Positions 1 to 55,809 of a stretch of DNA of 64,000 nt are shown one piece after another (position 1 is the first letter of the stretch; every line of letters starts with the position of its first letter). The stretch is from Thalia democratica (taxonomy: Eukaryota). Location of the stretch: NCBI GenBank assembly GCA_965202585.1, contig OZ241829.1:31434001-31498000 (forward strand), given 5' to 3'. A model generated the notes under the pieces. It ran no database searches, had not been told where the DNA came from, and was given only the letters and a program-made list of their open reading frames with translations. Both the position numbers and the translations under genes were made by a program.

Positions 1-3000
1 GTTCGACAGATCGCTCAAGTTGGTGTTTTTACAAACATTCTTTCAAAACTGACCGATTTGCTTATGCGCTGAATTCGCACAGGTACACGATAAACTCCAG
101 CCACACCAGCTACTTGCTGGTGAAAGCCACCGTGGTCCCCATTCAGCTCCGACTGTCCACGCACTTCCTCGAGCTGCATCCCGAGAACGGGGCGTCCGTG
201 TACTGCGCGTACAAGTAAGTTGATGTTTGTACCAGAGGTTTTTGCGGTAAGCACAGTAGTGTGGAAGAAATCATTTCACTGTGAATTGAAAGCTAGTTAA
301 AGGATATAAACATTTTCATCATATAGGTAGAAAATTTTTGTTTCTACAAAAAATTTTTTTTTTCCCCACAGTAAGCAACCACTCAAACTTGTGTTTGAAT
401 TAGAAAAAAAGTTAGTAATTGGTATTCTCAATGCATTATTTTTTATTCTCAGGATTAAAGCATGCTTACAAACATGTAAGTAATATTTTATTTGAGTGTT
501 AGCAAACTTTTTAGGTCGACAGTGACACTGCACAACGACAGAAACCACCCGGCAGATTTCCAGTGGTCCCCCATACTGGGCGAACGAGGCACCGCGTTTT
601 CAATCAGGCCAGCGTCCGGCACCGTTGCCGCGTTCAAGAGCCTCAAGTGTGAGGTTTGACGACTTTTTGTTTTAGTTTAAGCTGTGGTTAATCGACTTAA
701 CACAGGTTTTTGTTTGGGTGAAACTTATACGTATTACAGCTAGCATTGAAAGTGAAATTTCCGAATTAAGTTTACAGATTAAAATAAAAAACTGAATGGG
801 CCTCGAGTGGTAAAAATTATATTTTTATTAGCAAACTTTCGCACCTCGAAAAGATGCTTTTAGCTAATAAAAAATAACTTGGTATAAGACGCTTGCAATT
901 ACTTTGTCGATTATTTTTTACGTTACTTTAAATTAAAGTAGAGTTGAAAATAGTTTAACTGCAAAAGTTTGTTTATTGTGAAAATACAAGAAAGTTATAA
1001 AGTATTTAAGTTTACCTGGAATAGTTGTTAAATCCTTTGTTACTGTAAACACAGGTGGTTTTTCACCAAAGTTACTTTGCACCACTAGAGGGTGAATTCC
1101 AAGTGAAGGTGAGCGGAGGAAAAACTTTTAAACTGAGCTGCGTTGCCAGATTGGGCACACCTACTGTAAAAGTAACAATGTTATCTATTTTTTGATTTAA
1201 ATTTTTTTATTGTGCTTGTTTACTTACCTTAAGTTTTTCGTTGTTTTTTGTGAAAACCACAAGGTGTTGTTACTACTTGACGCTTAAAACTTTTCATTTA
1301 CTTACATGATTTAATATTATTTTTTATTAACAAAGCAGTTCGGAATAACAATTTTTTGTATTTAAATTCAAATTGTTAAAAGTGCAATAAACGTAAGAAT
1401 GTTTTTCCGTAAGTTGTCGACGTATTCAAGCATAATTAGGCATTATAAGACGTAATTAGTTCAAAAATTGCGTTGTTTCTTATCTAAGTAGCTGACCGTC
1501 ACGTCACAGTTTTTGGACAAGCGCCTGGGTTTCGGCAACGTTGCCATGAAGCTGGTCGCCCACCGGACCGCCATCCTCAGCAACGTGGGCGCCTACAACG
1601 CCATGTTCTACGTTGCCAACAGCAACCCCATCCCCAACATGACCATTGAACCCGTGCATGGGATAATACCGGTGGGGGGCAGTACCGAGCTGAAAGTTTG
1701 TGTTTTTTGATGTTAATAATTAAAGTTTTTGTCAATGTTTTAAATTAGTCATTTTTGCTTGAAAAATTGTGAAAAATAAACAGGTATATAAATATATTTG
1801 TTTTACAAAGTACTCTAATTTGTAAATTTGAAATTTTTAGATTGTCAAAAAAATGAAAGACATGAGACTGTATCACACTTACTTTTGAAAACAAGTTACA
1901 TTACTTGGTTTCATTACTGTTATATTTTGTAAGAAGATGTTTTATGTATTAATTTATTTAAAAAAAATCAATGAGTACCGTAATAAGTACCATTTTTGTG
2001 GTACCTAAACATAAGTCTTTTAATTGTTTTCACATTTAAGTATGTGATTCATTCTATATATTTTTCTCTCATGATGTTACATTTAGTATAATTTATTTTA
2101 AACAACCTAATTAATTTTTCAGATAAAGTTTCAGCCGCAAAACTTGATCAAGTACGATGCATACACCGAAGTCTTTATAAGAGGCGCCAAACCGCTTGAG
2201 TTGAGGCTCAATGGCTGCGTCGAAGAACCGAAAGTTGATATAAACATATCTGTTAGTACGATATCAACTTTAGTGTTTATGCTTATATGTTAACAAGTAT
2301 TTTAAGTCGTTCACAGCATTGTTCTTTGTTTTAAGTTTTAAGTTGTAAAATACTTTTATAAACTTTTTTTAAGACATAGCAGTAATTGTACCCTTAACAT
2401 TAAACAAATCAGTTTTCTTAAAGCAACCTTTCCTAATGTTACATGTTTCAATATTGAAAGTGTCGTGTCTACCAATTTTCAATTGCAGAACTTCAATTTC
2501 CACGGGGTGTACTGCGGGTCGCGACACCTCATACCCTTCAAAATGTTCAACAGGGCCATGACGAAAGCCCTGGTGGAAGTGGACATGTCCAGGTACGAGG
2601 ATTTCACGTTTCACCGTGTCGTGGACAGACTAGTTGGTCAGTGAGAACTTTATAATCGATGTTTATATTTATATTTTCGAAGTTTACTATTATAGTAGAA
2701 GGTCTTTTTATCAACTTACGGTTTTAGTTTAGAATGTAAATAACTAAATAACTTTTACACTATAATAACAATATAAACAAGTTCTATTCACGTTTTTTTT
2801 TGTTCTTAATTGTAATATGTTATTGAACTGATTTTTGTTGAGATATTTTTGTGGCCCGCCTAAATAATTTTCTTTGAAATGTTGTCTGGTAGGTAAAACG
2901 ATAGGGCAACCTTGAACTAAACCTATCTCACACAACAAAATGTGTTTGTAACGTTTTTTTCCAATTTAATCATGTAAATTTTTTTTTACTAGTTCAAAAG

Positions 3001-6000: not shown

Positions 6001-9000
6001 GACTGCTTTATTTTAGGTGGGTCTGTGAACAGCACTTTGACAGCTGTGTTGAGTTTCAAATCTCTAAATCATTTTTCAAAAACAATCAACATCGTCTTCA
6101 CTGACGAAGATGACAACAAGTGGGTGTTTTGAGCGTTCTAGTTTTTTAATAGACAATTACTTACGCCGTCATTGTTTTCTAGAAAAAGTTTTAAATACTA
6201 AAGTTTAAAATTTAAACTATGAACAAACATTTAGTTTAAACATCAAGTCTTGTTTCTTAGAAAATGATTTTCTACGAATCAGAGTTTTTTTATTCTGATG
6301 ATTGAGCTACAGATTTTTATTAAGTATTAGCTCATGATTTTTTCTAAATTTATTTCTCCACAATTTAAACTCAAATCGCGTTCAGGTACACAATGCAAGT
6401 GACGGCCACTGCAGACAACAGTTTACTGTCAACATACGCGTTCATGGCCAAGCACAAAACCGACTACAGAATCGTCTGCGCCGCTAAATCGTTCATAGGT
6501 CAGACGAGCAACAACGAACACCCGCAAGTTGTTAAAAGTTCGTTTGAAACTAGGGTTGAGTAGTTTAAAATTATTACAAAAATAAAAGAAACTACTTTGA
6601 GAGCACGAGCTTTATAAGATAGCTTTAAAAATGTTAATTAGTTAGAAAACATACGACAGTATACATTTTTACATCTTGATAAAGAACTTGTTTTATTAAC
6701 TCGTTTTAAAACAATAAAAGCGTATTCCATAACTTTTCTGACCCCAAAAATTTACTTTGTTTTAAAATAGTTTTTGATTATGAATGCTAAAATTATTTTT
6801 CTATTCTTATTTCGGCTATTATTATAATTAGGTTCTATAAAAGTTGTAAAACAATAAAAATAATCTTCCATCGTTTTTGCGACCCAATAATTTTATTTTC
6901 TATCACAACAAAAATTTAAACTCACCTGAATAACTTCCCGTGCAGCTACCGGTTGCGACGCGATGCTGATACCGCTGGAAGACAACAGCCAATCAGAGTC
7001 GCGCAGCCGGTGGAGCGGAACGAACTCCACGTCGCGCTTCAACATGTCGACCACTATGACGTATGACGGGGAAGGAGAAAGTCAGTTCGAGTACCGGTAC
7101 AGAGAGGGTTGGTTGTGCAAATTTGTTATTTTTTTGTAAAAAGTTTTCAAAATCAAACACCGATGTACAGTCGTACTAAACTGCATTAATAATTCAGATA
7201 ACCGTTTTATAATTTTGCTTAACTTTTTTTTACATTAGATGTTAATAGAAACAAGATAAAAAAATTACGGGTAGATTAGTTTAGTAAAACAGCTCCCTAA
7301 AGTTGACTATCAGTTTTTTGTGACGAAATAAAAGTAAGTCAGTAGTTAGTCAGTAGTTTTAGACTTTCATTCAGTTTTTTAAAAGTTTACTTCTCTTTGT
7401 TTTGAAGACTTTTTGTTTAAAATGTGAAATGACAGCTGAGAGGGCAGCAGTTAGCTCGACCGCAGTAAACAGTAAGAAGAGCAAAACATTTATCTCTGAC
7501 GACCAGAAGTCAGATACTGGTCAGTAAACTTTTCTTGTACTACTTGATCAAATTACAGTGGGTATCAAGTTTTACCAAGTAAGAATAAACGTAAACATAG
7601 TCACTAAGAAAAAGTTTAACCCTTGGTAAATTGAATATCTTGATACCCTTGATAAAATCTATAGTAATTATTTTTTCTTGCATTAAAACCTTTTTTTTTA
7701 TTTAGTCAAGTAAAAATTATTTGATAACTGATAAAGTTAGAAGAAGAAGATAATTTTTGTTAAATTTTGTTTTCAATTCATAGAAATTAATTTGTTTCTA
7801 AAATTAGTCTATGAGCTTTACTAAACTAGTACTTAATTTTTTATTTAATTAATTAAATATGATTTTTTACAACTATATGAACTGTAAACTGGTTAATTAA
7901 CTATTATATATTTTTTATAAAAAAAATCTTTATATTAATTAATCACTAAAATACTTATTAAAGTAATAAAAACTGTACTAAAACAAAATTGTTAATCTTA
8001 TTTATATATTTTAGGTACAGAATCATCAACTGCTATGACTTCAACTACAACAAAAACAATTTCAAACCGATCTGTTAACAAGGTTCGTCTCAAGTTGCAA
8101 TACTAAACTCGAGCCTTTTTGTTGCAAATGAACTCCGGCTTTGATTTCATAAAATGTTTGTGGTATTAAACACTGTTTGCGAAATGTAACAGTTAAAACT
8201 TAAAACGAGGATTTAAAAGTTTTCTGCATGATTTAGTAGAAATACCTGCTAAGCGCGTATAAAGACTTTTGATAACTTTCAATGTTACCAAACCAGCGGA
8301 GATTTTTTTATACTTCGCTCTTCCCACAGATCAGGAACTCTTACGTGTCCTCGCAAACCCCGGGCCTGCCCCCGGACGAGGACAGCTCGGAGGTGCGCGT
8401 CCACCCGACCGAGGACTCCTCGCTGTCCCAGAACGAGCTGGACTGCAACTCGATGTTCCCGCCGATGCACCACGACGACCACGGCTACCACTCGGACGTG
8501 GTCCGCACCGTCGAGTGCTGGTTCCAGAGCTTCGGGTGGAACACGCCCTTCCACTTCAAGATACCCGACAACATCAGGAAGTCGGTGTTGTTTCAATAAA
8601 TTTTTATTGTCAACATTTAATACAGTTTAATTATAAGTTTATTGAACCAGACAAATTTGGTTTAAGGACCTGGTGTGCGAAAAGACATCTTGGTCTACGA
8701 GTCGTACACCATCTGTTTATTTTCAAATGATAATTTTTTCTTACAATCGAAACATTGAGTTAACATTTCAAAACGTTGATCTTCATTAAAGATTAAGCAG
8801 TTGATCGCCATATTTTTTAATAAATTACAAAGTGCTTTAAATTTTAATTGAAACTGTTGACTGAACGTTCACAAAATTTTGTAGCCTGACGAGCAGATAC
8901 GCGTGCAGGTATGACGAGGAAAACTTCAAAACTTCCTCCAGCACCGCCATAACCAACTCCAACACCTTGTACGACATGATCTCCCACTTGACTGGAAGGT

Positions 9001-12000
9001 AGCTTGGTTGTTTGATTAAACTATAAGTTAAACATGATTTAATGGGACACGTTCAAAATCCACCCGCAATCAAAATCCACCCAGCCAAATTCGAGAATCG
9101 CTTACCGATCGAGGGTTAGGGGTATCAGTGATAGTGAAAAAAAATGCAAAAAATATATAAAATAAATTAAGAAAATAAAGTAAAAAATTGGGTGGATTAT
9201 GAAACGCGAGTAGATTTCGATAATATACCGATTTAATAGAGCTAAAAGGTGATTGATTTATAAAGTTTTTAGAACTGGAACCTCACAAAGTCAGATAAAT
9301 ATTTTTCTCTATTATAAGATAAAGACACTATACAATTCTACAGTGAAATTTTTTAATACTCCCTGCTTCGTAATCAAATACTTGTTTAAGTTTAATTTAA
9401 ATAAAACTTCAGGCAACTGCCAGGAGTTTCGGTCAATTCTCCGCTTCCCAGCAACACGAAAGAAAGAATCACGCAACTTCACTGGCAACACGCCACTCTC
9501 ATAACACTTGTCAGGTAATTTACGTTTACTTGTCTGTTTTACTGAAATGTATGAGCAAACGATTTTTAAGTTAGAGCTAGTTCTTCAATAACTTATTTAA
9601 CCATAAAGGACTTTTTAACTCTAATACGAAGCTCGCAATAAAAAAAAATCTAATCAAAGACACACTTACCTAACATACAGTAACTATTCCCCACACACAC
9701 ACACGCACAACTTTACTGAACAACCAAAACTGAATTTCACAGAGCGAACGGCGGATCGGTGGCGAGCATCCGGCCGGAGCACCTGCTCAACCCCACCGAC
9801 TACAAGAGCTGGGCGCGGCTGAAGGGCCAGGTGAGGTGCGACGCGCCCCCCCTGCCCCACGAAACCAAGTCGGACTCGTCGGTGGAGTCGAGGGACAGCG
9901 ACGAGCTGGACTCGGTGGGGGCGCCGTCCGAGACGCTGTCGTCGATGCAGGTGCTGAAGCGGCACGACTTCAAGGAGTTCGACGAGGCCACGTTCCACCT
10001 GGTCAGCAAGAAGGCGTGGTGCGACCTGCTCATTCAGATTTACAAGGTTTCGTTTGTGTTGGAGAGTTGCTAAGACGTGTTCATTTGTTTCGTTGGTTTC
10101 AAGGCGATAATTCTTAGTGTTTGAAACGTCGTATCTACTGCTTTTCAAGTTTTTAAATCGCCGCAAGTTGTCTTCCATGTAAAGTAGTTTTTATTGATGA
10201 GGCTATGTGCAACTCTTTTTTGTTTATTTTTTTTTTAACTATTTTTATTAAAGCAAGTTTTTTTTTGCAATAACATTAAGTCTTTACAAATTGTCGACTC
10301 CACAACTGACGTTTCTTTCCAGGTTTTCATTCTGTCCAGAGTGAATTACCAAAACTATTTGCAGCTGAAGCCGCTTCCGAAAGGAACAAACTTTCCGCCA
10401 ATCAACCCGGAGCTGGCGTCCAGCAATATTTACAGGTACACCTGCTATGTTTGAAATATAAATGTATAAAAAGTAGCGCTTCACATACAAGTTCAATTGA
10501 ACTTTTATTCATTTAAAGTAACGTATTTTGTTTAAAAGAATGTTGATAGAAGTGATTTCATATGTATTTATAAGTATTTTCATTGTTTATTACAAAAACT
10601 CACACACACATAATTTACTTTTCAATCCGCTTCAGCTTGAGCGAGCGAATAGTTCTGTCGTGGCTGAACCACTGTTATGCGCACTTCTGCAAAACCTACA
10701 CCAACAGCGAGGGCCTGCCCCCTTCGTCGCGGTGGGTCGTCAACTTTGACGCCGACCTCTTGGACGGCCTGGTCCTGTGCGCCGCCCTCGGAGTCTACTG
10801 TCCCTGGCTGGTTCGTTGCGTCCTTTTTTTTTTTAAACATCATAAACATTTGAAAGTATTTAATTTTATGACATTCGGATTAATAAAGCATTTTGAGATA
10901 GCAAAGTAACTTGAGGTGTTTTGGTTTAAAGTTCAACTTAATAGTGAATTTTTGGTAGAAATACTATATTTTATGTTTAAGATTTAATTAAAATTAATCT
11001 TACACTTAAACTAATGCTTAAAAGTTTACGAAAAATGTTATTAAGTTAATACATGAAAGAATGTTTTTTAGGGGAGATAATAAATTTAATCTATTATTTT
11101 TGTAACAACACACTTTCGAATAATTTATACTTGATATAAACAACATCTACTTCTTCACAGTTCATTTGATTTACAGCCGTATGTTACTGTTTATTTAACC
11201 TCCATAACTATTTGTTGATAGAAAGAAGAAGTGTTGCAAGATTTGTACGTTGCGCCCACCACGGCCGAAGAGTGCCTCCACAACAGTTTGCTGTTCATAA
11301 AAGCCATGAAGTCGCTCAGCTTCATCTACCAGATACAAGCAACTGACATCACCGATCCCAATCCCATCACAATGTTGTTTGTTAGTGTTTGAAACATGTG
11401 TGTTAAAAAAAGAAACGTGCTTAACTTAGACATTTGAAACATTGGTCATTTAAGAAAATTTTTAGTAAGTTGTATGATCAATTTATTTTTTATATTATAT
11501 TGATAGCACCAGCAGTAAATTTTTGTACAACGACTTTAAGTTAGTAAAAAAACATGCAAAATTTATTTAACTACATGGATGTATTAAGAGATTCTAAAAT
11601 TATGGTTTTAGAATTATAGTGCTAGTAATATTCTAAATTTTTACAGTTATTGTTGTGTTACATTTTTGTTCCTAACAGTCGGCTAATGTTTTATATTTTA
11701 TAAATTTTTATTAAACAGTTATGCGTGTATTTGTATCAACAACTACCTGATTTCCTACCAAAAGCCAAGGTTGAGTTTCTCGGATCTCTGGGAGGAACCG
11801 TTAAAAGAAAGGTTGGTTTTGTATTTAAATTTTGGATGAGTTTAAGCTACTTTCCAAACTTAAATAAGCTCTGTGTCTTTATATCTAATAAATATTAAGC
11901 ATATAGCAGAATGATTTAACAACTTTGTAATATGCACTTAATAGGTCTCCGAGTAACATTATAACATGTTAAATTGTATTATATAGATTTTTAAAATAAT

Positions 12001-15000
12001 TTTAATTGTTAAATTGTAAATAAATTATTATATTTTTGCAATGATGCATTTAGGTAATGGTGCAAAATTCAGCTGGTAAGCCGGTGAAGTACATTAGCAA
12101 AATTGTGGGTAGAGATTCAAATGACTTTCATATTATAGATGGCAAGGAGCTTCATACGCTGGCCAGGTATATAAAATATGAAGTAGTCGAACTTTTTTTG
12201 TTATTATAAGCTAAAATAATCTTTTAAATGAGTACTAATATATAATTAGGCTCAGTTTTAAAGCAAGACATAACACTCAACATAACAAAAAAAATATTTT
12301 AAGCTAGGTTCAAGCAACATACGCCCCGCGATGTAATTTTTAGCTTAAAATCAATTTATGCAAAGCAAAAAATGAACTATGTGCTTTATCAAATGTAATC
12401 TAAAATCAATTTTAAGTACACTACGCAGCAGTACTGATTAAATGAATATTTTGTTATAGTTTTCTTTTGAAAAGTTGTTGGTAATTTTTATGGTAAGTTT
12501 TTTTTAATTACGCGGCTTGCGCAAGACTTTTTCTGATGAACCTCCCTGCCGACTGCAAAAGATTTTCACCACCACTCTGGAACAACGCATTGCATTTTTT
12601 TTACCTTATTAAAACCAAAACAAAAAGGATCAGCTTTCAAAAATGCATTTTGTTTCACTTTTGTCACGAATACACGCAGGGTCTACACTCCCGTCGAGGT
12701 CACCTTCCGGTCCAGGCTTCTGCGGCCGGCCGAGGCCTACCTCGTTCTCACGTCCAAGTTCGAGTTTCCCACGCAGATCGAGACCAACCACACGAACCAC
12801 GCGTCCAAGCTGAGCATGTCGCAGCAGTACATGGTCGGCGACACGCTGGTGTTCGAGCTGTCCACCATCGTCAACGACGTGCAGCCCATCAGGATCGTCC
12901 CGTGCCAGTCGCCCTGCTACGAGATCACCCCCGTGCAAGTGCCCGTAAGTCGTTTGAAAATAATAGTTTTAGATTTAAACTTGTTTGAGGACGTGTTTTA
13001 TTCTAAAATAAATTAGCAACTCAAGTAAAAAAAAGAAAATTAATGAAAAACTGCACTATAAAATAGCATGCTTCTTAAGTTTGAAAGGTTATAAATTTAA
13101 CTTGTACAAGTGTTTTATGTGTTATTGTTAAAGCATAAAATATAAACGAAATTAATAGCTTGTTTTAGTTTTAGATTTTTTAAATCTGTGACAGACAGGA
13201 AAAATTTAAATATTTTGATAAGTAAGTTTCAAACATACCAATAAACTTTTATAAATTCTAATGATACAAAACTTGATAAATTGTTATATTTTTGAAATTT
13301 TATTTACTACTCTAGTATATAACAAAACTACTTTAAAGAAGTATAATGTAATAGCTACTTTTATGGTAATGAAAATAAAAACTGGAGTGTATAAATACTT
13401 GTAGTGATGTTAAACAATGATAATTTGAATTAAAGGCTGTACAATGGGAATTTACATTAGATTACTTCAACGTCTAAACTTTTTATTTGAATTTCGTTAA
13501 AAAAATTAAGTTTTAATATATTGTGTTTTATGGTACACTCGTGACTTAGTAGATTTTGATTAAAATTTTAAGCTTTTAATTGCCAATATAAATTATCCTT
13601 GCATCTTCGCTTAATCTAAGACTGAAGATTGATTTTATAATTGTATATAGAAGTTACTTTATTTAGAATTTTGTTCATTAAAAAAGGTTATAAGAAATTT
13701 TGACAAAATCAACTGTAAACGTAATTATAGATATTTTATTAACAAAATTCACCGTGGAACTTTTAAGCTATTTAAATCCTTAAATTTTATTTGTTTATTT
13801 AACAAGATATTACTAAGTTTTTTGTTATCAAAAATAAAGCTGTGAAAATAATTTTAGATACTAAATATGATCTATTTGGCTTTATAGTTGTATTATTTAT
13901 TTAAATATCTTCAACTGTTTACACGTAGACAGGGTTCCCACTTCCCTATATATCACTATAATTTCCTACCAATTTGCAATACTCTGAAAGATCCCTATAA
14001 ATACCTAGAAAAAATTGAAAACTATGTGAAAATCCCTAGAAATCCCTATGAATTACGTTTGTTTTTTGTTGATGGTTGAAATTTGAAAGCAAAACAGTGA
14101 CACCGCGTGGTGAAAAACACATAAAAAATGTTTTAAGTATTTTTTAAATCTAAATCTTTGCAATCTCAGTAAAAAGCTGTAACTCCATGCTGCCACCTGG
14201 CGGATAAAATTATCTTTATTTACATTAAATCCAATTTATCTAAAGTTTGCTAACTTAACTAAAATTAGAGCTCAAAAACCCTCAAACTTTCGTAAATTTC
14301 TTATTAAGACTGTGCTTATAAACGGTTAATGACATATTTTACTTTATGTACTTTAAAAGTATGTTCGTAACGTATAAAATTCATTGTTATTTTTTTGATA
14401 ATTTCCCTATAAATTTGCTATACTTTATGGATTTCCCTATAATTTTTTTAAATAATTTTAGTAGGAACCCTGCGTAGATATCTGTGAAAATAATAGTTAC
14501 AACTTTTTAATGCAAGCATCAAGATATAGGTGATAAAAATTTTAAAATACACATAGATTAAAATAAAAAGTTTTTTTCAATTATATGTTGACAATAAGTT
14601 GTGTAAAATATTTTATTTTAAGTTTAATTTAAATACTATATTTAACTTATTATAAATTAAAAAAACTCTCTTTTAGTTAGTTTATTGCTTAAGATTATTC
14701 TAATGTTTACTAAATGTTTATAGAAAAAATTCTATAATTGTCGAGGAGTTTTTTGTAACAGCAACTTTTAAGGTATAGAAATAGCTTTTTTTAAATAATA
14801 GCTTTTCTCTATCCTAACTATCAACATTTTGTAGTAAGTATTTGCTTTTTTTTCATTATACCACATCCCAACGTTTTAAAAAATGTTTAAGGCTCAGTCT
14901 TTTTTTTTTTTTTGTTTTATTCAGCTGTCATTATAATTAAAAAACATTGTATATCAACCTAGTTTGAAAAAGTAAGTAAACTACAGTTTAGACTTTGTAG

Positions 15001-18000
15001 CATCTTAAAATATATAAGCATGTTTTTTTAATTAACAACAACTGTTCAAATTCATGTTTTAGTCTTAGTTTTTTTTCGGAGTATATATTCTTTGTTTAAA
15101 AATAAATTGTGGAAAATAAAATTTCCCGTTTGCGTACAGTTCAGTTCTATCTTACTTTTCAGTTTTCATAAAAATAATTGTGAGTAAATTAATTAAGAAA
15201 AAAATAAAAATAAAAACTTGACCAGCATTTGTCTTATAGCATTTTTTCTGCGCTGTAAGATTCAATTTTCCTAAACCAGTTTTATTATTATGCGTTTAAT
15301 AAATACAGTATCACTTAGTGCACTTACAATATGTTAAAGTTCAAATAATTTTATCTAGCTTTTGCTTATACTTGTTATGTTTTATATGTTTAATTGTGAT
15401 AAGGATTGCAAAAATCATTTTTTTTAAATTGCTTTAAAAAGCTGTTTATAAACGTTTCTTTAAGTTTAAAACTTTAAAAATTTTAAAACACTTGGGAAAC
15501 GGGTACTAGAAAATAAAAACAAATTTTTAAAAACTAAACCTATTTTGAATTCATAATAATAATCTTATAATGACTTTTTAAGTACTTTAACTAGAAAAAT
15601 AGGTTGGAATTAGATAGTAAAGGTTTGAGATAGTGTTCTATGTTTTCAAGTAAAAAAAAAGTTTATTAAATTCAAAAATTAAAAGTGGTCATAAAAAGTT
15701 AATAAAAAAACATCAAGTGATGATTAGCGGCAGTTTGGTATCAAAAGATTTCCTCACTGAACTGCGCACCGGATTCGGCTCGACGCTCCGAATTCTCTTC
15801 CTCACTTTCCGCCTTCTCTCGTCCGTCCTCCGGTAGCTCTCCTTCAGATCGTATATTTTGTTTTTCGTGTCGCTGATGTCGTCGTACGTCATCTCGTAGT
15901 CGGAAATGAGGAGAGGGAGGTGCAGCAAACCGGCTTTGCTCTGCAGCTTCGAGTTCCTGCTCCTCACCTTGTTCCTCTTGCGCTTCAGCAGGGTTATTTT
16001 CCGCCTGTGCTCCTGTATGTCCTCTTCTAATTTCCCCCGCCGCCTCCGCATACTCTCGATCTCCTCCCGCTGCATCTGCGCCTTCTCCTTGATGTGCGCC
16101 GCCCTGATCACGTTCCTCCGCACGCCCTCCTTGATGCCCTCGATCCTGATGTTGCGCTCCTGCAGGGTCTCGAACATTCGGTGGATCTCCATCTTCATCT
16201 GCTCGTGGTCCAGCAGGCTCACGTCGTCCGCGTCGGCGTTCTTCTCGCGGATCTTCGCCTTGAGCCGGTCTATCTGGTGGCCGACCCTGATGCTGATCGT
16301 CCTCACCCTCCTCACCTGCTCGTACTTGTTGCTCTCCTTCACCATCAGGTGCTCCAGCCTCTGCTGCGGCAGCGGCGCGCAGTTGTCGTACTTGGCCTCG
16401 CGGCAGTACCTCACCAGCTTCTTGCACATCTTCTTCCACAGCTCGAAGCAGTCCCGCACCTTGTCGGTCGACTGCTCCTCGAAGCTGGCCTGCAGCCCCA
16501 CCAGCTCCTTCTCGTCCGCCAGCTTGCGCTTCTTCAGCAGGTCGTAGTTGATCAGCTTGGCTATGAACCGCTTCCCCTGCTCGTCGTCTTTCTCCTTGTC
16601 CACGCGGTGCTCGATCGTAAACTCTTCCCGTCTACTTTTCCTGTGCACGTGAAATGACTCTTGCTAAGCGTAAAAAAAATGTCTAATTTCATTAGCTTAG
16701 ATTGGTTAAAAACTACCATTTTCTAACTTTTATACCTTTTTAATTTTTTTCAATTACTTTTTTTTAATTATGGACAAAGACACCAAGGTTATTTTAAAAA
16801 ATATATAAAACAAAGCTTTTTTTTTTTTGATATGTGTTTATGTATTTACGAAGTTAAGATCAGAACGAAAAATCACAAACAAATCTCTTAAAACATTGGT
16901 CAACTCAAGGAACTAGCACATCATAGTTTATTGCTGTTGTTATATACATAAAAGGACTATAAGTGTTTGTTTTTGATCGTGGGTTATACAAATTGAACTA
17001 TTAGTTTTTTCGAAGATTGTTAAATATACCTTATTTAGTTTTTAGAATAGATGTGCTTACTCATCATTACAAGTCTAAAATTTTGATAATAATGTTACGT
17101 TTGGCAATGCACTTAAAAACTAACCTTGCAAAATCGTAATTAACCTTTACAAAGTATATAAACAAATATTAAATATGTAACCTAAGTATTTTGCATAGGT
17201 GGTGCTGCACCTGCGTGTTTTCCTTCACCAACTCGCTCTGCTTCCTTATTTCTTCCCAGTACATCTCCTCGAGCTCCTCTCTCGTAAACTTCTTTTCTTC
17301 TTTCTCCTCCGAAATGCTCGACAATGTCGTTTTTTTAGAAGACAATCCCGAAGAACTGGAAGACTGCTCCCTCCTGACCGACTGTAGGTGCAGCGAAATC
17401 TTGCTCAAGTTACTCTGAACTAGAGGATCCACGTCGAGGTTTTCCACGTTAATTTCTGGGTTGCTGATCCACTCAGGAACTTCGTCAACGTCCGTGAGTT
17501 GAAACCTGTTTGCGCGTTTGACTTTTTCCATTGTTTCATTGGCAAGCCCCAACAAGTCCGCTGTCATTTGTTCCTGGGTTTCTTTAAGCTGAGTGTCTAA
17601 ACCTACAAAGTCTTCTGTCTGTTGAACTTCTAAAACATCGTCTTTAACTGTAATGACGTCGTCTTGCTCGTAGCTTTGCACATTCAATGTGAACTTTGTC
17701 GTCTTTAATGCTTTTAGCTGACTTTCTGATGTTTGTTCTGTTTCTTGAAGAGAAGTTGTGTCCAAATTTTGATTTACTTTACTTTTTTCTTGTTGGCTTT
17801 CTCCATTTTTTAGCTCATTTTCTTCTAAAGATTCTTGATTAAGTGCACCGATTTTTGCTTGTTCATCTAATTTTTTTATATCTTTTTCTTCTGAAGACTC
17901 ATGTTTGTCAATTGAATTTAGAACATTGTTTCCACCATTTGCATCTTCTTCAGCTGATTTGTGGTAACTGTCTTGGGTAAGTTTATATTGCAAAACCTTT

Positions 18001-21000
18001 TCGTTTTTCCTTTTTAATTCAGTAAACACATTGTCGTCTTGTTCTCGTATCGCTTCTATAGTTTCATCGGTAAAGTGACCGTCTAATGAAACGTTATGTA
18101 GTTCTAGTGCTAATTCTGAAAGTGATTTAAACTCACTTTTCGCATGGGAACTCATTTCAAAAAATCCAGTTAAATGTGGTTAGTACTGAGAGTAGTTTGT
18201 GTTTCAAATAAACTTCATGCTAACTGGTTGCAATTGCACATTTGATGCTGCAAAAAAATAATGACGTAATAATGAAAATCTAACTTAACTGTACAACATT
18301 AAAATTCAAGTTATTACTTTTTAACTCTTCGTTGTTTAAGTATGCTAAAACAATTTTATTTTCATTTGCTATTTGTAAATGCAAAACTTAACTATTTTGC
18401 TATATTATATATTACAAATTACTAGTTTAAATAATTAAAAAAAAACAAAAGATAGTTTAGAAAAATCTACAAATTTGTTGCATATTAGTTTAGTTCAACA
18501 ATCTTAACTAATATGCAAAACATTTGTAGATTTTTCTAAACTATCTTTTTTTTTTAATTATTGATGCATATGAAAAGTCACAAATAAAAAATTGACTGTG
18601 TTCTGGACTGATTTAAGAATTTTGTATAAATCTTGTCTAATTTAAATAATTGATTAATAAAAAATCAAATTAAATTATCTATTTACCCTTTCTTAATGTG
18701 GCATAGAAAACTAACTAAACAATTTAATGAAACTTAGCTATTAATTATACACAACTCATGATCCGTTTTACTTAAAAATGTTTTTACAGTTATTTCGTTA
18801 TATGTATTAGTTTATCTTTCTAGTAAAAATATTCTTCGTATATTTTGCTTATTTTTAAAACAACTGTTTGAAGTCAAAATAAAAGTTTAAGTTCAAGAAC
18901 ACAATTGTTTAAGATATTCATTTTTTAAATCATAGGTTTTTAAGTTATTTAAAATATCAAATTTTATAGATTCTAAAACAGCATATTTTTTGGCATTTTC
19001 AATACTGTAGTCCAATCAACTTAACCTTTCTTAAATAGGAATGAAATTATTTTATAGTTTTACTTTTTTGAAAACTAACTTAGTTTGTGGTTATACAGGT
19101 AATTTCGCCTTTTTTTTGTGAAATGTTTTAATTATTAATATAACTAGCTTAAAACACCAAAGAAAATAGTTTACAATCCAACCAGAAACCCCCAACTCCA
19201 AACAGGTGTGCAACATCTTCCACAAGGCGTGCGAGTTCAAGGTGATCGTCAGCGAGCCGAAGATCAACCCGCTTCAGAAGGAGCAGCAGAACTCGCCGCC
19301 CGTCAAGCCGCAGGGCGCCAATGGGGCGAAGCGGAGGGGCAACCAGGCCAAGCGCAGGTTCGACACGGACGAGACGGAGGTGGTTACCACGGCCAACACG
19401 GAGCCGGAGGAGGATCGCGCTAGGAGGCACCGCGACGTGCCCTGCTTCTACTGTGATGTCACAAGCGTGTACATGGAGGCCGGGGAGAAGAAAAATATTT
19501 TGGTTGGTGTTTGTTTAGATTTGAAAAATTTAGTTTAATTATATTGATAGAAAAAAGTGTTTATGATATTGATTTTTGTTCATTATCAAATTTTAAAATC
19601 AGATGTTACGCAAAAAGGCGTTAAATCCTAGAGTTCCAGACGAGTAAAACTAACCAGAAATCAAAACAACCGTTTTCATACCTAGTTGCCATATTATTCT
19701 GACAACGTTTTGCCACCCATAGAGAATAGATAACTTTAACTTGAAACTTACAAAGTATATACATAAATAAAATAAATTGTACAGATAAAATATTTGCCGT
19801 TTGCAATGGGCAAGGACTTCTGCACCATCCTGCTGGTGAACGAGCAAGTGGGCGAAATGGTGTACGCGGTTGAGGGGGAGGCCCTCCTGCCGGTCCCCAC
19901 CCAGCTCAAATTGAACCGCAACTCGAGTCACACCACCGTCCTCGACCAGAACACCAAGAAGCTCAGAGGTACTAGTCGGGTGTTAAAAATAAAAAAAAAA
20001 TAGTTTGAAACGTTGTCCTTCATTAAAGACTATACACTTTCTTGAAGTTTCTAAGTTTTTTTAGCTGTAAATGCAGGTTGTTGTATTACTTGCATTTATT
20101 TATGGTATTTTTGTGTAATTTTTACATACAATTAAAGTTTTTATTTCTCAAGGTTGCAAGCCGAACGTGTTGTACTGGCAATGCCAGGTAAACGAGCGGA
20201 TAAGCGAGGTTCTGAACATCCCGGTGATCAACCCTGCCAAGGAGAAAGCGCTGAGGATTGCCGCTCAGCAGTCCATGAGCAAGTGCGAGCAGAGAAGGAG
20301 ATCGTTGACCGGTATTTTGTATTTTAGATGGTGGTAATTTAAAAACCAATATCTTCTGTAGTATAAGTTTTATAGTTTTTATCTCAAATCAAATTAATTT
20401 TGTTGATTTCATTGGCGGGGTCCAAAAGTTTTACTTACGTTAACGTTAGCCCTTTTTTTGTTAATTGAAGTATAAACAATAGATACTTTTAAAGAATTTT
20501 AAGTTTCATGATATGTTTTTTCTAATAAATAACAGTAACAAACAATACTACGGTTATCTTCACCATCGCTGAATTGTTTTTGCCGTTTTACAATAAGCTC
20601 TAAACTATCCTGTACGACCATGATCATTAGCAGCTTTGTCAACAAATATTTAAAGTGGAAAAATTACTTAATTATAAAATAACACCAAAAATACATACGT
20701 ATTCTTGACCTAGCTTTATTTTAACCAAGTTTTTATATTATGAGTAAAAATAGTTTGTATGCATGTTTCAAACTCTGAGAACAGTAAGTTAAATTAGATT
20801 AATCGTAATCCAATCGAATTGATAAAATTGGGGCAATTATATTTCATATTTTAAATAAATGTTGCTGATTAAAAAATAGGTTAGTTTGAAATAATAAACA
20901 AAACAATTCAACGCTAATAATTCATCCAGGAACTCTGCACAGCGGCAAAGTAGCGGCAAAAGCGGTCATCCGTAACAGCCAGACGAGAAAGTCCCTGCAG

Positions 21001-24000: not shown

Positions 24001-27000
24001 TGACATTTTTTTAATCAATAGAATTTGGTATTCCTTGATGATCGAGGTCGTGCCTTCGGACTTCATCAAAAACGTTCAAATAGAATGCGAGGTGCAAAAG
24101 TCTGTGACGACTGAAGTTAAAATTGAAAATCCCACAAACGAAAAACTCGACCTCAGCGTGAGTCTCATTTATAAAAAACATTTAATTTAAAGCCATGACT
24201 GAAAATAGTAGAGTTTATATTAACTAATTGAATTTTAATTTGATTTCTAATAGGAAGTTTTTAATCAATAGTTTGTTTGAAGTCTAAAAATAATTTTAAT
24301 AATTTTTGAAAATCAAATTAAATAACGACGTGTTCACGGAAACATGATATCAAATAATAATTCTGATAATCAAACTTTTTCCTTGTATCTTTATATTCGT
24401 AGATAACAAACAAAACAACAAGTATGAGCTTTCGAACTCTAGTAAGCTTTTTAAAATTAATTCCAAATATACTTGTTTTCTTATGATGCTTATTAATAAC
24501 AACTTAAATCACGTGACTTTCTTCAGGTGGAAATTCTGGGCGATTACCTGTCGGCGCAGAAGACGCTCACTCTGATGCCGGGGATTCCCGGAACCGTCCC
24601 CATAACCTTCAGCCCGATCAGGGTGGGGGCGTGGGACGGGTCGCTGGTGCTCAACAGCGAGCTGAGCGGAGAGTTCTGGTACAAGATCAGCGTCAGCTCC
24701 ACCACTCCCCCGCCCAAGTCCCTCCGCACCATGGAGTGCGAGCTTGGTAAACTGTTTTAATTGATTTGCACATTTAAAAGTCTGTTAGGATCAACGAGTT
24801 TACTTATTGTAAGAATGTACTTTATTTTCGGGTATGGTAGATAAAAATTTTGTTATACAACAAAATAAAAACGAATTTGCGCAACAGTTTTAGTTTTTAA
24901 GGTTACATGGCTCGAGTTTTTGGTTTATTTTTACTATAAACCAATGCACAGGTATAGGTATTAACTCAACAAACATCTAATTACATTAAAATACCCGCGT
25001 AATCTTTTTTTCGAAGTTGTACTTTATATGATTAAAATTCTCACAATCTAACCACAGAGCGTTGCGTTACTGTTTAGCCAACAAAAAATCCAATTCCTTT
25101 TTAATTTTTTTGAAATCTATTCCAACAGGCAGCTTCTGCCGAAGGTCGATACCGATCCACAACATGTGCAAGACCGAGGACATGGTGGTGGACGTTGTGG
25201 TCAGCAACCGCACCAACTTCCACGTCCAGTCCAACTACCTGGTGCAGGAGGACTCGGTGACGAGCGAGGAGAAGCGGGAGCAGATCCTGGTTACCAAGGA
25301 CACCACGGTGGACGTCCTCATCCAGTTCTCCCCGACCTCGCTGGGGATCCACTCCCACAAGTCTACTGGTAACTTTCAGTTTTTGCGGCTCGGTATTTAA
25401 TTTAAAGTGTTGTACAAAGATTAAAACTATTGCGTTTAAATATTTCGAGCATCTTGTTGTTTAAAATTGAACATAAACTGTAGTTGATTTTTTTAAACAA
25501 TATTTCAACACTAGTAAACTTCACCGCTTTTTTTTGTTCGCAACTCAGTGGTGTTCAAGTCGAAGCAGCTGGGCGACTGCGTGTACTACGTGAGCGGAAG
25601 GGGCCTCCTCCCCAAGCTGATGCCCCCGACCAGCATATCGGCCTCGGTGGGGTCCGGCAACTCCAACGTCATCCAGTTCATGAACCCCACCGACTCCACC
25701 GTCGTCGCCGACATAAAGTTGACGGAGAACGATCAGGTGCTCAGAGAAGTCAGATCCTCCATCATACAGTTTGTTTTTACTTTTGTCTAAGATTATATTT
25801 CATTTTGATTTGTTATTATAGTCCATATTTTATGTTCAAATTTTTTTTTTTTTGATTGTTTAAGTTATATAAAAGTTTAACATGCCTCTATACCTATATT
25901 TTGATTATAAAGGAAATAAGTGAAATACACATTTTTTATAAGAACTTAAATTTTTTTTAGACGCAGCGTGACAACAGAGCCCGCGTTCTCCATTCTGACC
26001 CACCAAAAACACAATTTGGAGGTGGAACCCCACGGAACAGTGGACATCCCCTTTGCTTTCAATCCTAGCGGGGTGAGTGTTGCAATGATTAATTGGATAT
26101 TACTTGTCCAACACAACTAATTTTAATTTGTAATTTTTACGTCGATATTAGTTGAAAAAATAATAAAAACTTAAGTATTTCGGCCAAACTTTACCTTTGT
26201 TTTCATTTACTACGATTTAAAGCTAGTTTACTTGTAAAAGCTTTTGTTAAATTAGTTTGTAGATACTCTTCTTTTTAACAGTTAACTAAAGTGCTTACTG
26301 TTATATACTTGATATGTTGTATTTAGATGCTCAAATACTTCGCAACAATTGCCATCTCTATAAAAAGAACGAAAGGCAGAATGTGGCCAAACGAATACGA
26401 GGATAACAGCCATCAATCTGGTATGTTTGTTATACATCTTTATATATATATATGTTTGTTTATATTTGGTTATATTATTACAGTGAAACTTTCAGTTTGT
26501 TTGTGAATAGCTTTCTTTCACTAATAAAGTTTTCTATTCGTATACTCGTTTTAAATTAGACATAAAATGATGCACAAATCTTAAGACGTAAACAATCTTC
26601 ATATTGTCGACCATAACGTCAGATGATTACTTCTTGGTATACTTTTTGTTACGATTTTTGTTTTTTTCACACTCAACAGCGATACAGTCGAGGGAGCAAC
26701 ACGAGCACATAAAACCCACGTACCACCACAACGAAATTCTGGCCATCAGATACGTGTACCCGGTCCACGGAATCCCTCACATCAAAATGGACAAGCCTAA
26801 CGGAGGTGTGTTTTTGATGTAAATTTCCAAGTGTTTTTGTTTCTGTTGTGTTTGTGAAAGTGCGAAGTTTTGTAAAAGTTTCATTTAAATATAACTTCTT
26901 ACCACTAGTTAATCAGCTAAATGTGGCTAAAACAAGTAAAGAGTTTCTTAATTTATTCATTATTTATATTAAAAAGCAACTGTTAAAATACGCACATTAT

Positions 27001-54639: not shown

Positions 54640-54963
54640 GCCTCATCATTAGCTGATCAAGGTCCATTAGCATCATCAATAGCTGATCAAGGTCCATTGG
54701 CATCATCATTAGCTGATCAAGGTCCATTGGCATCATCATTAGCTGATCAAGGTCCATTGGCATCATCATTAGCTGATCAAGGTCCATTGGCATCATCATT
54801 AGCTGATCAAGGTCAAGGTCCATTGGCATCATCATTAGCTGATCGAGGTCCATTGGCATCATCATTTGCTGATCAAGGTTCATTAGCATCATCATTTGCT
54901 GATCAAGGTCCATTGACATTATCATTAGCTGATCAAGGTCTATTGGCATTATCATTAGTTGAT
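54640..54963. repeat. 30-bp minisatellite (~11 units; reads ASSLADQGPL on +), with a solo unit at 55222-55262
   Basis: Unit gcatcatcattagctgatcaaggtccattg. One 6-nt internal duplication (caaggt). All variation keeps the frame. Confidence 0.9.
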
Positions 54964-55809
54964 GTGAGTGAAAATGGTTGGTTATGTTGAAAAACAGTTA
55001 ATTATTATTAAATAATGACAACAAAACATGTTTTTTTTTTTAAATTATCATTTTGGATCTGAGAATAATAAATTATGCAAAGAATAAAATTTCATACACA
55101 GTTAAACAATTTCATATAAAATATTTAATTTAAATTTATATATTGACTAAATGAATAAAACTTTTAAAGAAGTTGGACTGCTAAGTGAAATAAAGCCTTC
55201 GTCACTAAGTGACATTACAAATGATCAAGGTCCATTAGCATTATCATTGGCTGATGCGAGTGAAGGAATTGAAGATAACCAAGAAAATTAAGATGAGGAA
55301 AAGTACAAAAACAGTTGGTATTTTTTATATAACGTAAAAATTACAATATTTTTGTAAGGAACTTTAGTAGTTTATAACAGCTATATTCTAACAAAACATT
55401 TTGTGAACAAATAAAAGGTTTGCCTGAAAATTAAAAAAGGCACTACTTTTTGGTACAGAGTTTTGCTAGAAAAATTATACATAAATCACTTATTTTGAAA
55501 GTTCAGAAAGTTTGTTTATAAGTTTGGTTTAGCACGTCATCAGAATAAAGCTGCTAAAAACTGACAAAAGTATACAAAATTTAGTATAATAAAAAGATTT
55601 CATTATATTCAGTTGAAACAGTTTTGTCATTAAGAGTCAAATGTAAAAGTCTGTATTAAAGTTTAAAAAAGAATTAAGTTAATCTTTACAATTTAAAGTT
55701 TTTTTTAAGGTAAAATCAACAGAATGAAAGTTTTACTTGAAACAGAATTAAAAAGTAAAGCTTTACAAAAAGCGGCAACAATAAATACACTAAAAATTCG
55801 CTATTTACA

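What the first reader, a model, noticed from the sequence alone, without database searches (positions are those of the whole stretch)
83..29046. Third-position GC ranges from 18% to 96% between exons of one mRNA and tracks exon length
Hand counts of G/C-ending codons: 9743-10046 (304 nt) 97/101; 12680-12944 (265 nt) 83/88; 11719-11811 (93 nt) 11/31; 8015-8082 (68 nt) 4/22; 27547-27718 (172 nt, an exception) 21/56. In the 304-nt exon, three of the four A/T-ending codons are within five codons of an edge. CCDC96 exon 2 is very GC-rich, while its poorly constrained first exon is AT-rich until the last ~250 nt. The Tg1 gene peaks in GC mid-exon-1 (~34380-34800) and has AT-rich short exons. CpG is abundant in the islands. 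Translational selection should act on the whole mRNA, so a local DNA- or chromatin-level process is implied. Candidates are GC-biased gene conversion confined to long indel-free homology blocks, or selection for GC-marked, nucleosome-sized exon definition that offsets the weak splice signals.
Basis: partly seen in the sequence, partly recalled or inferred. Interest (0 to 1): 0.72.

Follow-up and report, generated by a model that had tools for sequence, protein, structure and literature searches.

The report
GC-ending codons fill long exons
In this very AT-rich animal genome, codons in the middle of long coding exons almost all end in G or C, while short exons of the same gene stay AT-rich; this shows a strong force on silent sites that stops at exon borders, and its cause (biased DNA repair or selection) can now be tested.

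Summary
All five hand counts reproduce exactly. I rebuilt the gene, a CFAP47-like cilia gene, as 51 exons; 11 are confirmed by spliced transcript contigs of a related species. Third-position GC (GC3) runs from 0.17 to 0.96 and tracks exon length (Spearman 0.85 for all exons, 0.95 for the transcript-confirmed ones). Flanking introns stay at 22-30% GC.

The length effect is best described as distance to both exon ends, with a reach of about 110-160 nt. It repeats in other genes of this genome. Genome-wide, runs of 12 G/C at spacing 3 are 28 times commoner than at spacing 2.

Length alone is not enough. Four myosin genes, an intronless 1094-codon myosin ORF and the 5' part of CCDC96 exon 1 are AT-rich at third positions despite long exons. 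Near-identical myosin paralogs differ in GC3 (0.24 against 0.55) by chromosomal location.

G equals C at fourfold sites, and G<->C swaps dominate silent differences between species. So an active fixation bias towards G/C operates (scaled strength about 4-6), not codon-specific translational selection. I found no support for compensation of weak splice sites.

Most likely cause: GC-biased gene conversion confined to exons (confidence about 0.45). Selection on mRNA GC content remains open.

Other readers of this scan noted the same trait elsewhere in this genome.

The parts
83..29046 (+). 3' part (51 exons, 2533 codons plus stop) of a CFAP47-like cilia/flagella gene. Mean GC3 0.74, GC1 0.50, GC2 0.40. 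Introns about 26% GC, median 271 nt.
   Evidence: Pfam PF24529 (CFAP47 domain; 26 bits, just under the 27-bit cut-off) and PF22544 on exon peptides. Exon model. Transcript contigs.
8015..8082 (+). 68-nt exon, GC3 0.17-0.18 (4/22), encoding a Ser/Thr-rich linker.
   Evidence: Splice joint 8082/8330 in related-species transcript contigs.
8330..8580 (+). 251-nt exon, GC3 0.96, only 247 nt downstream of the AT-rich 68-nt exon.
9743..10046 (+). 304-nt exon, GC3 0.96 (97/101). An ortholog sits on a metagenome contig (L001): the exon is about 91% identical, while the upstream intron is no more alignable than shuffled sequence.
11719..11811 (+). 93-nt exon, GC3 0.35 (11/31), encoding a structured part of the protein.
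12680..12944 (+). 265-nt exon, GC3 0.94 (83/88).
27547..27718 (+). 172-nt exon, GC3 0.37 (21/56): the outlier to the length rule. It has a low model score and no transcript support.
12945..19205 (+). 6.3-kb intron of the CFAP47-like gene that holds CCDC96 on the other strand.
15716..16663 (-). CCDC96 last coding exon. GC3 is 0.93-1.0 over about 200 codons that cover the Pfam coiled-coil domain, falling to 0.47 and 0 in the last 20-25 codons. The 3' flank is AT-rich at once.
   Evidence: Pfam PF13870, E 7.8e-25. Profile.
17169..18155 (-). CCDC96 first coding exon (open frame of 328 codons). GC3 is 0.07-0.33 over the first 150 codons (acidic, low-complexity N-terminus) and 0.5-0.73 near the donor side.
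33960..34986 (+). Long first exon of the neighbouring 'Tg1' gene. Overall GC3 is 0.42, with a GC peak at 34376-34798.

Best explanation
Shown: silent sites inside coding exons are under a strong, continuing fixation bias towards G or C. The bias does not care which of the two is used. It stops within about 20 nt of the splice junction. It weakens towards both exon ends with a reach of about 110-160 nt, so short exons get almost none of it and look like introns. A second, gene-level factor that follows chromosomal location scales it from zero to full strength.

Inferred cause: GC-biased gene conversion whose heteroduplex tracts are confined to the conserved coding blocks, because the flanking introns evolve fast and are rich in indels. 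A tract that must fit inside an exon covers central sites of long exons often, edge sites less, and short exons hardly at all. Local recombination activity would set the gene-level factor. GC3-saturated exons have low silent diversity, which would further favour pairing and reinforce the state.
For: 1. The effect is limited to third positions and to exons. GC3 tracks exon length (rho 0.85 and 0.95). GC1 tracks it only weakly (rho 0.33), GC2 does not (rho 0.16), and flanking intron GC does not follow length.

2. A model with exponential decay from both edges fits best. In CFAP47: AIC 2511, against 2539 for log length and 2854 for the null, with a decay length of 164 nt and an asymptote near 1.0. 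It repeats in seven mosaic myosin genes, with a decay length of 106-135 nt and GC3 of 0.39, 0.56, 0.72 and 0.82 by length class. This scale resembles non-crossover tract lengths (my own knowledge).

3. The bias is strand-symmetric, and NCG codons are not avoided.

4. The bias is active.
- Against relative L001, the upstream intron aligns no better than shuffled sequence (z 1.6).
- Yet only 8 S->W and 1 W->S changes occur at 101 third positions, against 11 S<->S.
- At fourfold sites, 9 of 12 differences are S<->S. A second relative shows the same trend.
- In mostly intronic DNA between organisms A and B, S<->S is only 3 of 141 changes.
- Both composition and substitution ratios give a scaled bias of about 4-6 (my inference).

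5. Saturation (GC3 0.96-1.0) occurs in cilia genes that are presumably lowly expressed. Amino-acid use also shifts slightly towards GC codons: K/(K+R) 0.66 to 0.56, I/(I+V) 0.52 to 0.41.

6. The gene-level factor follows location.
- Sarcomeric-type myosin paralogs A and D are 90% identical in protein with the same exon lengths. At identical residues GC3 is 0.24 in A and 0.55 in D.
- A groups with its neighbour B, and C with D, although A is closer in sequence to C and D than to B.
- All four uniformly AT-rich multi-exon myosins lie at C2:31.5-42.7 Mb.

7. A comparable 'intron barrier to conversion tracts' was proposed for rice and Arabidopsis (10.1101/010819).
Against: - Ordinary gene conversion does not tell exons from introns (argued in PMC4338330). 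Here intron GC rises only by about 0.1 within 20 nt of GC3-rich exons and by 0.03 at 30-100 nt. The barrier would therefore have to be almost absolute.
- The share of 31-letter words held by runs of the same organism (0.69-0.83) implies only about 0.6-1.2% difference from the reference. That may be too little heterology to stop heteroduplex so sharply.
- Intron GC is the same (0.21-0.27) in GC3-rich and GC3-poor genes.
- An intact intronless myosin ORF of 1094 codons has GC3 near 0.2. This fits only if its region recombines little, which I could not test.
- I had no polymorphism or recombination data.
- The clustering of AT-rich genes on C2 is not statistically significant.
Confidence: 0.45

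Rival explanations
1. Selection on the GC content of the mature mRNA or pre-mRNA. In a genome whose introns are recognised partly by AT-richness, AT-rich stretches far from a real junction risk being treated as introns or being handled poorly (cryptic splicing, premature 3' end formation, poor export or stability). Silent sites in long-exon interiors would then be kept G/C, while sites near junctions are covered by splicing-dependent effects.
For: - It gives a border as sharp as the splice junction.
- The effect is limited to third positions and is indifferent between G and C.
- The dependence on distance to both junctions has the same form as the number of possible cryptic introns.
- Multi-exon but not single-exon lncRNAs are GC-rich in animals (PMC4338330).
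- In this genome the intronless myosin is AT-rich.
- GC content directly affects splicing in AT-rich Paramecium (PMC8997360, title and abstract start).
- Splicing and GC content interact in human expression (PMC7181179).
Against: - Long AT-rich exons are tolerated: 170-230-nt exons with GC3 0.16-0.32 in myosins A, B, J and K, and about 450 nt of CCDC96 exon 1.
- Paralogs with the same exon and intron structure and 90% identical proteins differ by location.
- A scaled strength of 4-6 at every silent site is large for the tiny effect one site has on splicing or export, and it is seen in presumably lowly expressed cilia genes.
- The human-type model predicts the highest GC in intronless genes. 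The opposite holds here.
Confidence: 0.3
2. Selection for GC-marked, nucleosome-sized exon definition that offsets weak splice signals.
For: - Exons are far more GC-rich than their flanking introns, as in the 'differential GC' architecture of vertebrates (PMC3638135).
- The reach of 110-160 nt is near nucleosome size.
Against: - Short exons, which are the hardest to define, have the least GC3.
- GC3 is lowest next to the splice sites.
- Splice-site scores are unrelated to GC3 or length.
- Whole genes with long introns (J and K, median about 1 kb) splice AT-rich exons.
- The change at the border happens within about 20 nt, which is sharper than nucleosome resolution.
Confidence: 0.07
3. Repair or conversion of genomic exons templated by spliced transcripts or cDNA, with GC-biased mismatch repair. 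Homology with a spliced template ends exactly at exon junctions.
For: - It explains the nucleotide-sharp border and the weakness of the effect in short exons and at exon edges.
- GC3 rises 5' to 3' in CCDC96, and another scan note reports the same in an Arf gene (unchecked).
Against: - The UTR flanks of CCDC96 are AT-rich.
- 5' exons of the CFAP47-like mRNA (over 8 kb) are as GC-rich as 3' ones.
- Muscle-type myosins C and D, unlikely to be germline-expressed, have raised GC3.
- Such events are rare where they have been studied (my own knowledge).
Confidence: 0.05
4. Classical translational selection for preferred codons, weakened near exon ends by splicing-enhancer constraints.
For: - The effect is limited to coding sequence and stops near the stop codon.
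- G/C-ending preferred codons are common in animals.
Against: - G and C are interchangeable at fourfold sites, and S<->S swaps accumulate freely.
- NCG codons are as common as NCC.
- Cilia genes are saturated, while sarcomeric-type myosin heavy chains A and B, likely very highly expressed, have GC3 of 0.25.
- The reach of 110-160 nt is much longer than known enhancer zones (my own knowledge).
Confidence: 0.04
5. No current force: GC3-rich exons are relics of a GC-rich ancestor that decay more slowly far from introns, or local mutation bias alone explains the pattern.
For: None specific. Mutation rates are known to rise near indels (my own knowledge).
Against: - G<->C changes, normally the rarest class, have reached about 19% at fourfold sites between the window and L001, while S->W changes are few. 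Many S->W mutations must therefore have occurred and been removed.
- The same exon is GC3-rich in relatives at 94% and at 37% protein identity.
Confidence: 0.03

Closest known systems
Intron 'barrier' effect on coding GC content in rice and Arabidopsis (Ressayre et al., 10.1101/010819)
   Same: GC3 changes in discrete steps at introns. Introns were proposed to block the spread of recombination-driven GC enrichment or of conversion tracts. The effect acts within single genes.
   Different: - In plants the GC-rich parts are the external regions (before the first intron and after the last), and internal exons are held in a low, narrow range. Here internal exons reach 0.96.
- Here the rule is distance to both exon ends.
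- Here introns stay at about 25% GC, and a first exon (CCDC96) is AT-rich.
Differential exon-intron GC architecture and GC-rich exon bodies in animals (Gelfman et al. PMC3638135; Haerty and Ponting PMC4338330)
   Same: Exons are richer in GC than flanking introns in low-GC regions. GC is high across the exon body and different at the edges. Single-exon transcripts lack the enrichment.
   Different: - The amplitude is far larger here (third positions 0.96, against 0.25 in introns).
- The effect is strongly graded by exon length.
- It is absent from whole genes depending on location.
- There is no sign of compensation for weak splice sites.
GC-biased gene conversion shaping GC3 between genes (for example Pouyet et al. 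PMC5576983 for human)
   Same: A strand-symmetric preference for G/C at silent sites. It varies with location and is not explained by tRNA-based selection.
   Different: In mammals, introns and flanks move together with GC3 at isochore scale. Here the signal is confined to coding exons and flips between neighbouring exons 247 nt apart.
Splicing-dependent codon usage in human genes (Mordstein et al. PMC7181179)
   Same: GC content at silent sites depends on where the introns are.
   Different: In human, GC is highest in single-exon genes and first exons. Here the one intronless gene examined and one first exon are AT-rich.

Membership tests
GC-biased gene conversion | A fixation bias from A/T to G/C that is strand-symmetric and indifferent between G and C | tested here: met
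   G = C = 0.45 at fourfold sites of long exons. S<->S swaps dominate third-position differences while S->W are few.
GC-biased gene conversion | Acts on all sequence within tracts, coding or not, so nearby introns are enriched too | tested here: not met
   Intron GC is 0.25-0.29 at 10-100 nt from GC3-rich exons, only 0.03-0.1 above that next to AT-rich exons. The family fits only with an added barrier at exon borders.
GC-biased gene conversion | Strength follows local recombination rate | not testable with these tools
   There is only indirect evidence: the GC3 level of myosin paralogs follows location, not ancestry.
GC-biased gene conversion | Derived W->S alleles segregate at higher frequency than S->W alleles | not testable with these tools
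   Only contigs of four runs over 6 kb could be laid. No allele frequencies were available.
Exon definition by GC contrast or nucleosome marking | Exon GC exceeds flanking intron GC | tested here: met
   Exon GC is 0.49-0.62, against 0.23-0.30 in introns beyond the first 10 nt.
Exon definition by GC contrast or nucleosome marking | The marking compensates for weak signals: it is stronger where splice sites are weak or exons are hard to recognise | tested here: not met
   Splice-site scores correlate with neither GC3 (rho 0.09) nor length (rho 0.04). Short exons have the lowest GC3. GC3 is lowest at exon edges. The weight matrices were trained on only 11 exons.
Exon definition by GC contrast or nucleosome marking | Higher nucleosome occupancy on marked exons | not testable with these tools
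   No chromatin data were available.
Translational selection on codon usage | Specific preferred codons within each family | tested here: not met
   C- and G-ending codons are used about equally overall, and NCG codons are common. G<->C swaps occur freely between relatives.
Translational selection on codon usage | Bias rises with expression level | tested here: inconclusive
   No expression data were available. By gene identity alone, cilia genes are saturated, while sarcomeric-type myosins A and B have GC3 of 0.25.
Intron barrier effect (plants) | Discrete GC3 steps at introns within one gene | tested here: met
   GC3 is 0.17 and 0.96 across a 247-nt intron. The two-edge model fits best.
Intron barrier effect (plants) | External gene regions are the GC-richest, and internal exons are low and uniform | tested here: not met
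   Internal exons reach 0.96. The 5' part of CCDC96 exon 1 has GC3 of 0.07-0.33.

The most novel reading that the evidence does not exclude
Exon-confined GC-biased gene conversion. Fast-evolving, indel-rich introns act as near-absolute barriers to heteroduplex, so conversion tracts must fit inside coding blocks. This would create self-reinforcing GC3 islands. Their height would follow a two-edge decay whose length (about 110-160 nt) reads out the tract scale, and local recombination activity would switch them on or off. If true, conversion-tract length and bias strength could be read from base composition alone, exon by exon.
Probability: 0.4. Interest if true: 0.8.

Novelty: new variant of a known kind. 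Interest (0 to 1): 0.6.

Why it matters
Whether silent-site GC content in animals is set by selection or by biased gene conversion is a long-standing dispute. Usually the two are hard to separate, because GC varies smoothly over large regions.

Here the signal is close to all-or-none at the scale of single exons. It follows a simple law of distance to exon ends. Within one genome it also comes with built-in controls: short against long exons of one mRNA, introns a few bases away, and near-identical paralogs at different locations.

This makes the question directly testable with population resequencing, a recombination map and a few recoding experiments.

There is also a practical point. Gene finders trained on GC-rich exons will miss the short AT-rich exons and the wholly AT-rich genes of this genome.

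Tried and rejected
- **GC3-blind exon finder.** An exon-chain finder that ignored third positions chose wrong frames in GC-rich exons. I replaced it with one that adds GC3 only as an optional bonus.
- **Spurious exon calls.** That finder still called a 30-nt exon inside a repeat (9085-9114), read the antisense of CCDC96 as plus-strand exons, and added a weak extra terminal exon. I removed all three using the transcript evidence and the frame.
- **Protein search for a full-length homolog.** The whole-library search with the 304-nt exon returned only short fragments, with no full-length CFAP47. The 1494-residue hit P0011 is too distant to confirm short exons.
- **Nearest-edge model.** An edge effect measured by distance to the nearest edge alone does not explain the length effect. 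A fixed-length tract coverage model fitted worse than the two-edge exponential.
- **Divergence against GC3.** Across 8 exons the correlation between divergence and GC3 was negative but not significant.
- **Regional test.** I did not try to get round it.
- **Rest of the window.** Genes at 47-64 kb could not be modelled reliably.
- **Literature.** Eight searches found no description of this exon-length law in an AT-rich animal. The sea-urchin codon-bias paper holds none of the exon-length or splice-site terms I searched for.
- **Organism.** It stayed coded. Relatives occur in marine plankton metagenomes and metatranscriptomes.
Full report
**What is in the window**

The window averages 30.5% GC, with long stretches at 21-26% and about 45 short islands near or above 50% GC. 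The plus-strand gene at 83-29046 encodes a CFAP47-like cilia and flagella protein: Pfam finds a HYDIN/CFAP65-type Ig domain above its cut-off and the CFAP47 domain just under its cut-off. CCDC96 (Pfam PF13870, E 7.8e-25) lies on the minus strand, inside a 6.3-kb intron of that gene. The genome is 802 Mb, and the window is C5:31,434,001-31,498,000. The organism's name is coded. Its relatives turn up in marine plankton metagenomes and metatranscriptomes.

**Checking the counts and the exons**

All five hand counts reproduce exactly. Spliced metatranscriptome contigs of a related species, 91-96% identical in the exons, lie on 8015-12946 with GT..AG joints. After small border corrections, the 11 exons join into one open frame. 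The contig's loose end after 12946 matches 19208-19220 exactly, which fixes the next exon at 19206.

A first exon-chain finder that ignored third positions picked wrong frames. A second one uses GC3 only as an optional bonus. It recovered all 11 supported exons, and after I removed evident errors it gave 51 exons with an open frame of 2533 codons ending at the stop at 29044-29046. The model's coding length downstream of 12944 is 3600 nt. About 3574 nt remain in the related 8394-nt contig.

**The relation to exon length**

- GC3 per exon runs from 0.17 to 0.96 and follows length. Spearman is 0.85 (51 exons), 0.95 (11 transcript-supported), 0.83 (43 confident) and 0.79 (confident exons of 100 nt or more).
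- GC1 follows weakly (0.33) and GC2 does not (0.16). Flanking intron GC does not follow length.
- The sharpest contrast is 0.17 against 0.96 across a 247-nt intron.
- At equal distance from the nearest edge, GC3 still rises with length: 0.33, 0.60, 0.62 and 0.75 within 9 nt of an edge. A nearest-edge effect is therefore not enough.
- A model in which both exon ends depress GC3 with exponential decay fits best. Its decay length is 164 nt and its asymptote is near 1 (AIC 2511, against 2539 for log length). Adding length to it gains nothing.
- 'Exon length' is therefore better stated as distance to both junctions.

**Sharpness of the border**

- Around 29 GC3-rich long exons, intron GC is 0.40-0.43 in the first 10 nt (which include the splice consensus), 0.29-0.30 at 10-20 nt and 0.23-0.29 beyond.
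- Next to 44 AT-rich exons the values are 0.30-0.33, 0.20-0.22 and 0.22-0.31.
- The excess at 30-100 nt is 0.03 (p 0.015).
- The force on free sites drops from strong to almost nothing within about 20 nt.

**Nature of the force**

- At fourfold sites of exons of 200 nt or more, the base shares are C 0.45, G 0.45, T 0.07 and A 0.04. NCG codons are as frequent as NCC.
- A metagenome contig (L001) carries the ortholog of the 304-nt exon at 94% protein identity. The exon aligns throughout, but the upstream intron aligns no better than shuffled sequence (z 1.6).
- Of 21 third-position differences to L001, 11 are G<->C swaps, 8 are S->W, 1 is W->S and 1 is W<->W. At 47 fourfold sites, 9 of 12 differences are G<->C.
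- The listed differences to the second relative show 7 S<->S, 3 S->W and 3 W->S at third positions.
- In mostly intronic DNA between the two coded organisms, G<->C changes are 3 of 141.
- So G<->C changes, usually the rarest mutations, have accumulated, while the much commoner S->W mutations have been removed. The bias is active and favours 'G or C', not particular codons.
- From composition (0.96 against an intron equilibrium near 0.24) and from the substitution ratios, I infer a scaled strength of about 4-6. This is an inference, not a measurement.
- Amino-acid use shifts slightly in the same direction. So do Leu and Arg first positions.

**Length is not sufficient**

- In CCDC96, GC3 is 0.93-1.0 across the conserved coiled-coil domain of the last exon. 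It decays to 0.47 and 0 before the stop. The first 150 codons of the roughly 960-nt first exon, a low-complexity N-terminus, have GC3 of 0.07-0.33.
- A search of the whole genome with the myosin-head family gave exon-level hits that do not depend on composition, and I fetched 13 myosin genes.
  - Five (E, G, H, I, O) show the same law clearly: within-gene rho 0.65-0.90, long exons 0.62-0.87 (single exons up to 0.99), short exons 0.29-0.56.
  - Two more (F, M) fit more weakly and were pooled with them for the two-edge fit.
  - Two (C, D) are intermediate.
  - Four (A, B, J, K) have GC3 of 0.09-0.44 in every exon of 50 nt or more, including exons of 170-230 nt at 0.16-0.32.
- An intact intronless myosin ORF of 1094 codons (head plus IQ motif) has GC3 of 0.10-0.37 throughout.
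- Intron GC is the same, 0.21-0.27, in all of these genes.
- The two-edge law repeats in the mosaic genes (decay 106-135 nt) and is absent in the AT-rich ones.

**A natural experiment**

Genes A-D are sarcomeric-type class II myosin heavy-chain paralogs. A and D are 90% identical in protein and share exon lengths. At identical residues, GC3 is 0.24 in A and 0.55 in D. A resembles its neighbour B (80 kb away, at 40.6 Mb), and C resembles D (20 kb away, at 51.2 Mb). Yet in sequence A is closer to C and D than to B. The gene-level factor therefore follows location, not ancestry, protein constraint or exon structure. All four AT-rich multi-exon myosins lie at C2:31.5-42.7 Mb. This is suggestive only.

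**Genome-wide scope**

Twelve G/C in a row at spacing 3 occur at 235,977 places per strand, against 8,283 at spacing 2. Some of the spacing-3 hits are trinucleotide repeats, but most of the listed ones look like coding sequence. Other first-stage readers of this scan noted exon-restricted GC3 islands, and a rise of GC3 with exon length, in other windows of this genome. Those notes are unchecked, and I did not use them as evidence.

**Weighing causes**

- *Translational selection* fits poorly. G and C are interchangeable. Cilia genes are saturated while muscle-type myosins A and B are not.
- *Exon-definition compensation* fits poorly. Short exons and exon edges carry the least GC3. Splice-site scores are unrelated to it. 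Genes with introns of about 1 kb splice AT-rich exons.
- *A relic or pure mutation-bias model* is contradicted by the substitution pattern.
- Two candidates remain.
  - *Gene conversion confined to exons* explains the symmetry, the saturation, the tract-like two-edge law, the small leak into amino acids and the dependence on location. It needs an almost absolute barrier at exon borders. The modest difference between reads of the same organism and the reference (about 0.6-1.2%, from word shares) may not provide one.
  - *Selection on mRNA or pre-mRNA GC content* explains the sharp border and the AT-rich intronless gene. It does not explain the tolerated long AT-rich exons, the paralog contrast or the per-site strength.
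- I put exon-confined biased conversion at about 0.45 and mRNA-level selection at about 0.30.

**Relation to the literature**

- The nearest description is the 'intron barrier' effect in rice and Arabidopsis. Its authors also suggested that introns block conversion tracts (10.1101/010819).
- Exon bodies richer in GC than introns, and the lack of this in single-exon transcripts, are known in animals (PMC4338330; PMC3638135).
- I found no paper describing this amplitude, the two-edge law or the location-dependent switch in an AT-rich animal. The searches were limited to the held library.

Noticed in passing
window 9042-9240: A very high-copy repeat inside a CFAP47 intron. Summed contig depth is about 250,000-290,000 in two DNA-like runs, against about 100 for its flanks, with many loose ends and an opposite-strand joint at 9083/9133. 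It is probably a small transposon-like element.
   Followed up: no
window 12945-19205: CCDC96 sits antisense inside a 6.3-kb intron of the CFAP47-like gene. A 950-nt block at 57% GC is therefore intronic for the host transcript, so AT-richness of introns is not absolute here.
   Followed up: partly
L005:1219-4500 (G000:C6:45.67 Mb): An intact intronless myosin gene (head plus IQ motif, open frame of 1094 codons) with GC3 of only 0.10-0.37. It is a long conserved coding exon that escapes the GC3 enrichment.
   Followed up: partly
L035-L038 (G000:C2:40.58, 40.66, 51.19 and 51.21 Mb): Two tandem pairs of sarcomeric-type myosin heavy-chain genes. The pairs differ twofold in GC3 at identical amino acids and share exon structure.
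   Followed up: yes
window 54662-54976: An open frame of 315 nt made of tandem repeats that encode a ten-residue unit, with GC3 of 0.09. It lies among moderately GC-rich islands (47.9-61.3 kb) that I could not model as genes.
   Followed up: no
L003, L004 (marine metagenome contigs): A more distant CFAP47 homolog (38% identity) from another plankton lineage has AT-rich exons (GC3 0.12-0.25) and introns of only 64-131 nt. L002 (37% identity) shares the GC3-rich exon state. The trait therefore varies among lineages.
   Followed up: partly
window 7450-13400, run X5: Contigs labelled as a second organism differ from the window by about 2% substitutions plus about 1% gaps over stretches that are mostly intron. 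Only two exonic differences for this run appear among the 40 differences the tool listed (189 more were not shown), so silent diversity in GC3-rich exons may be strongly reduced.
   Followed up: partly
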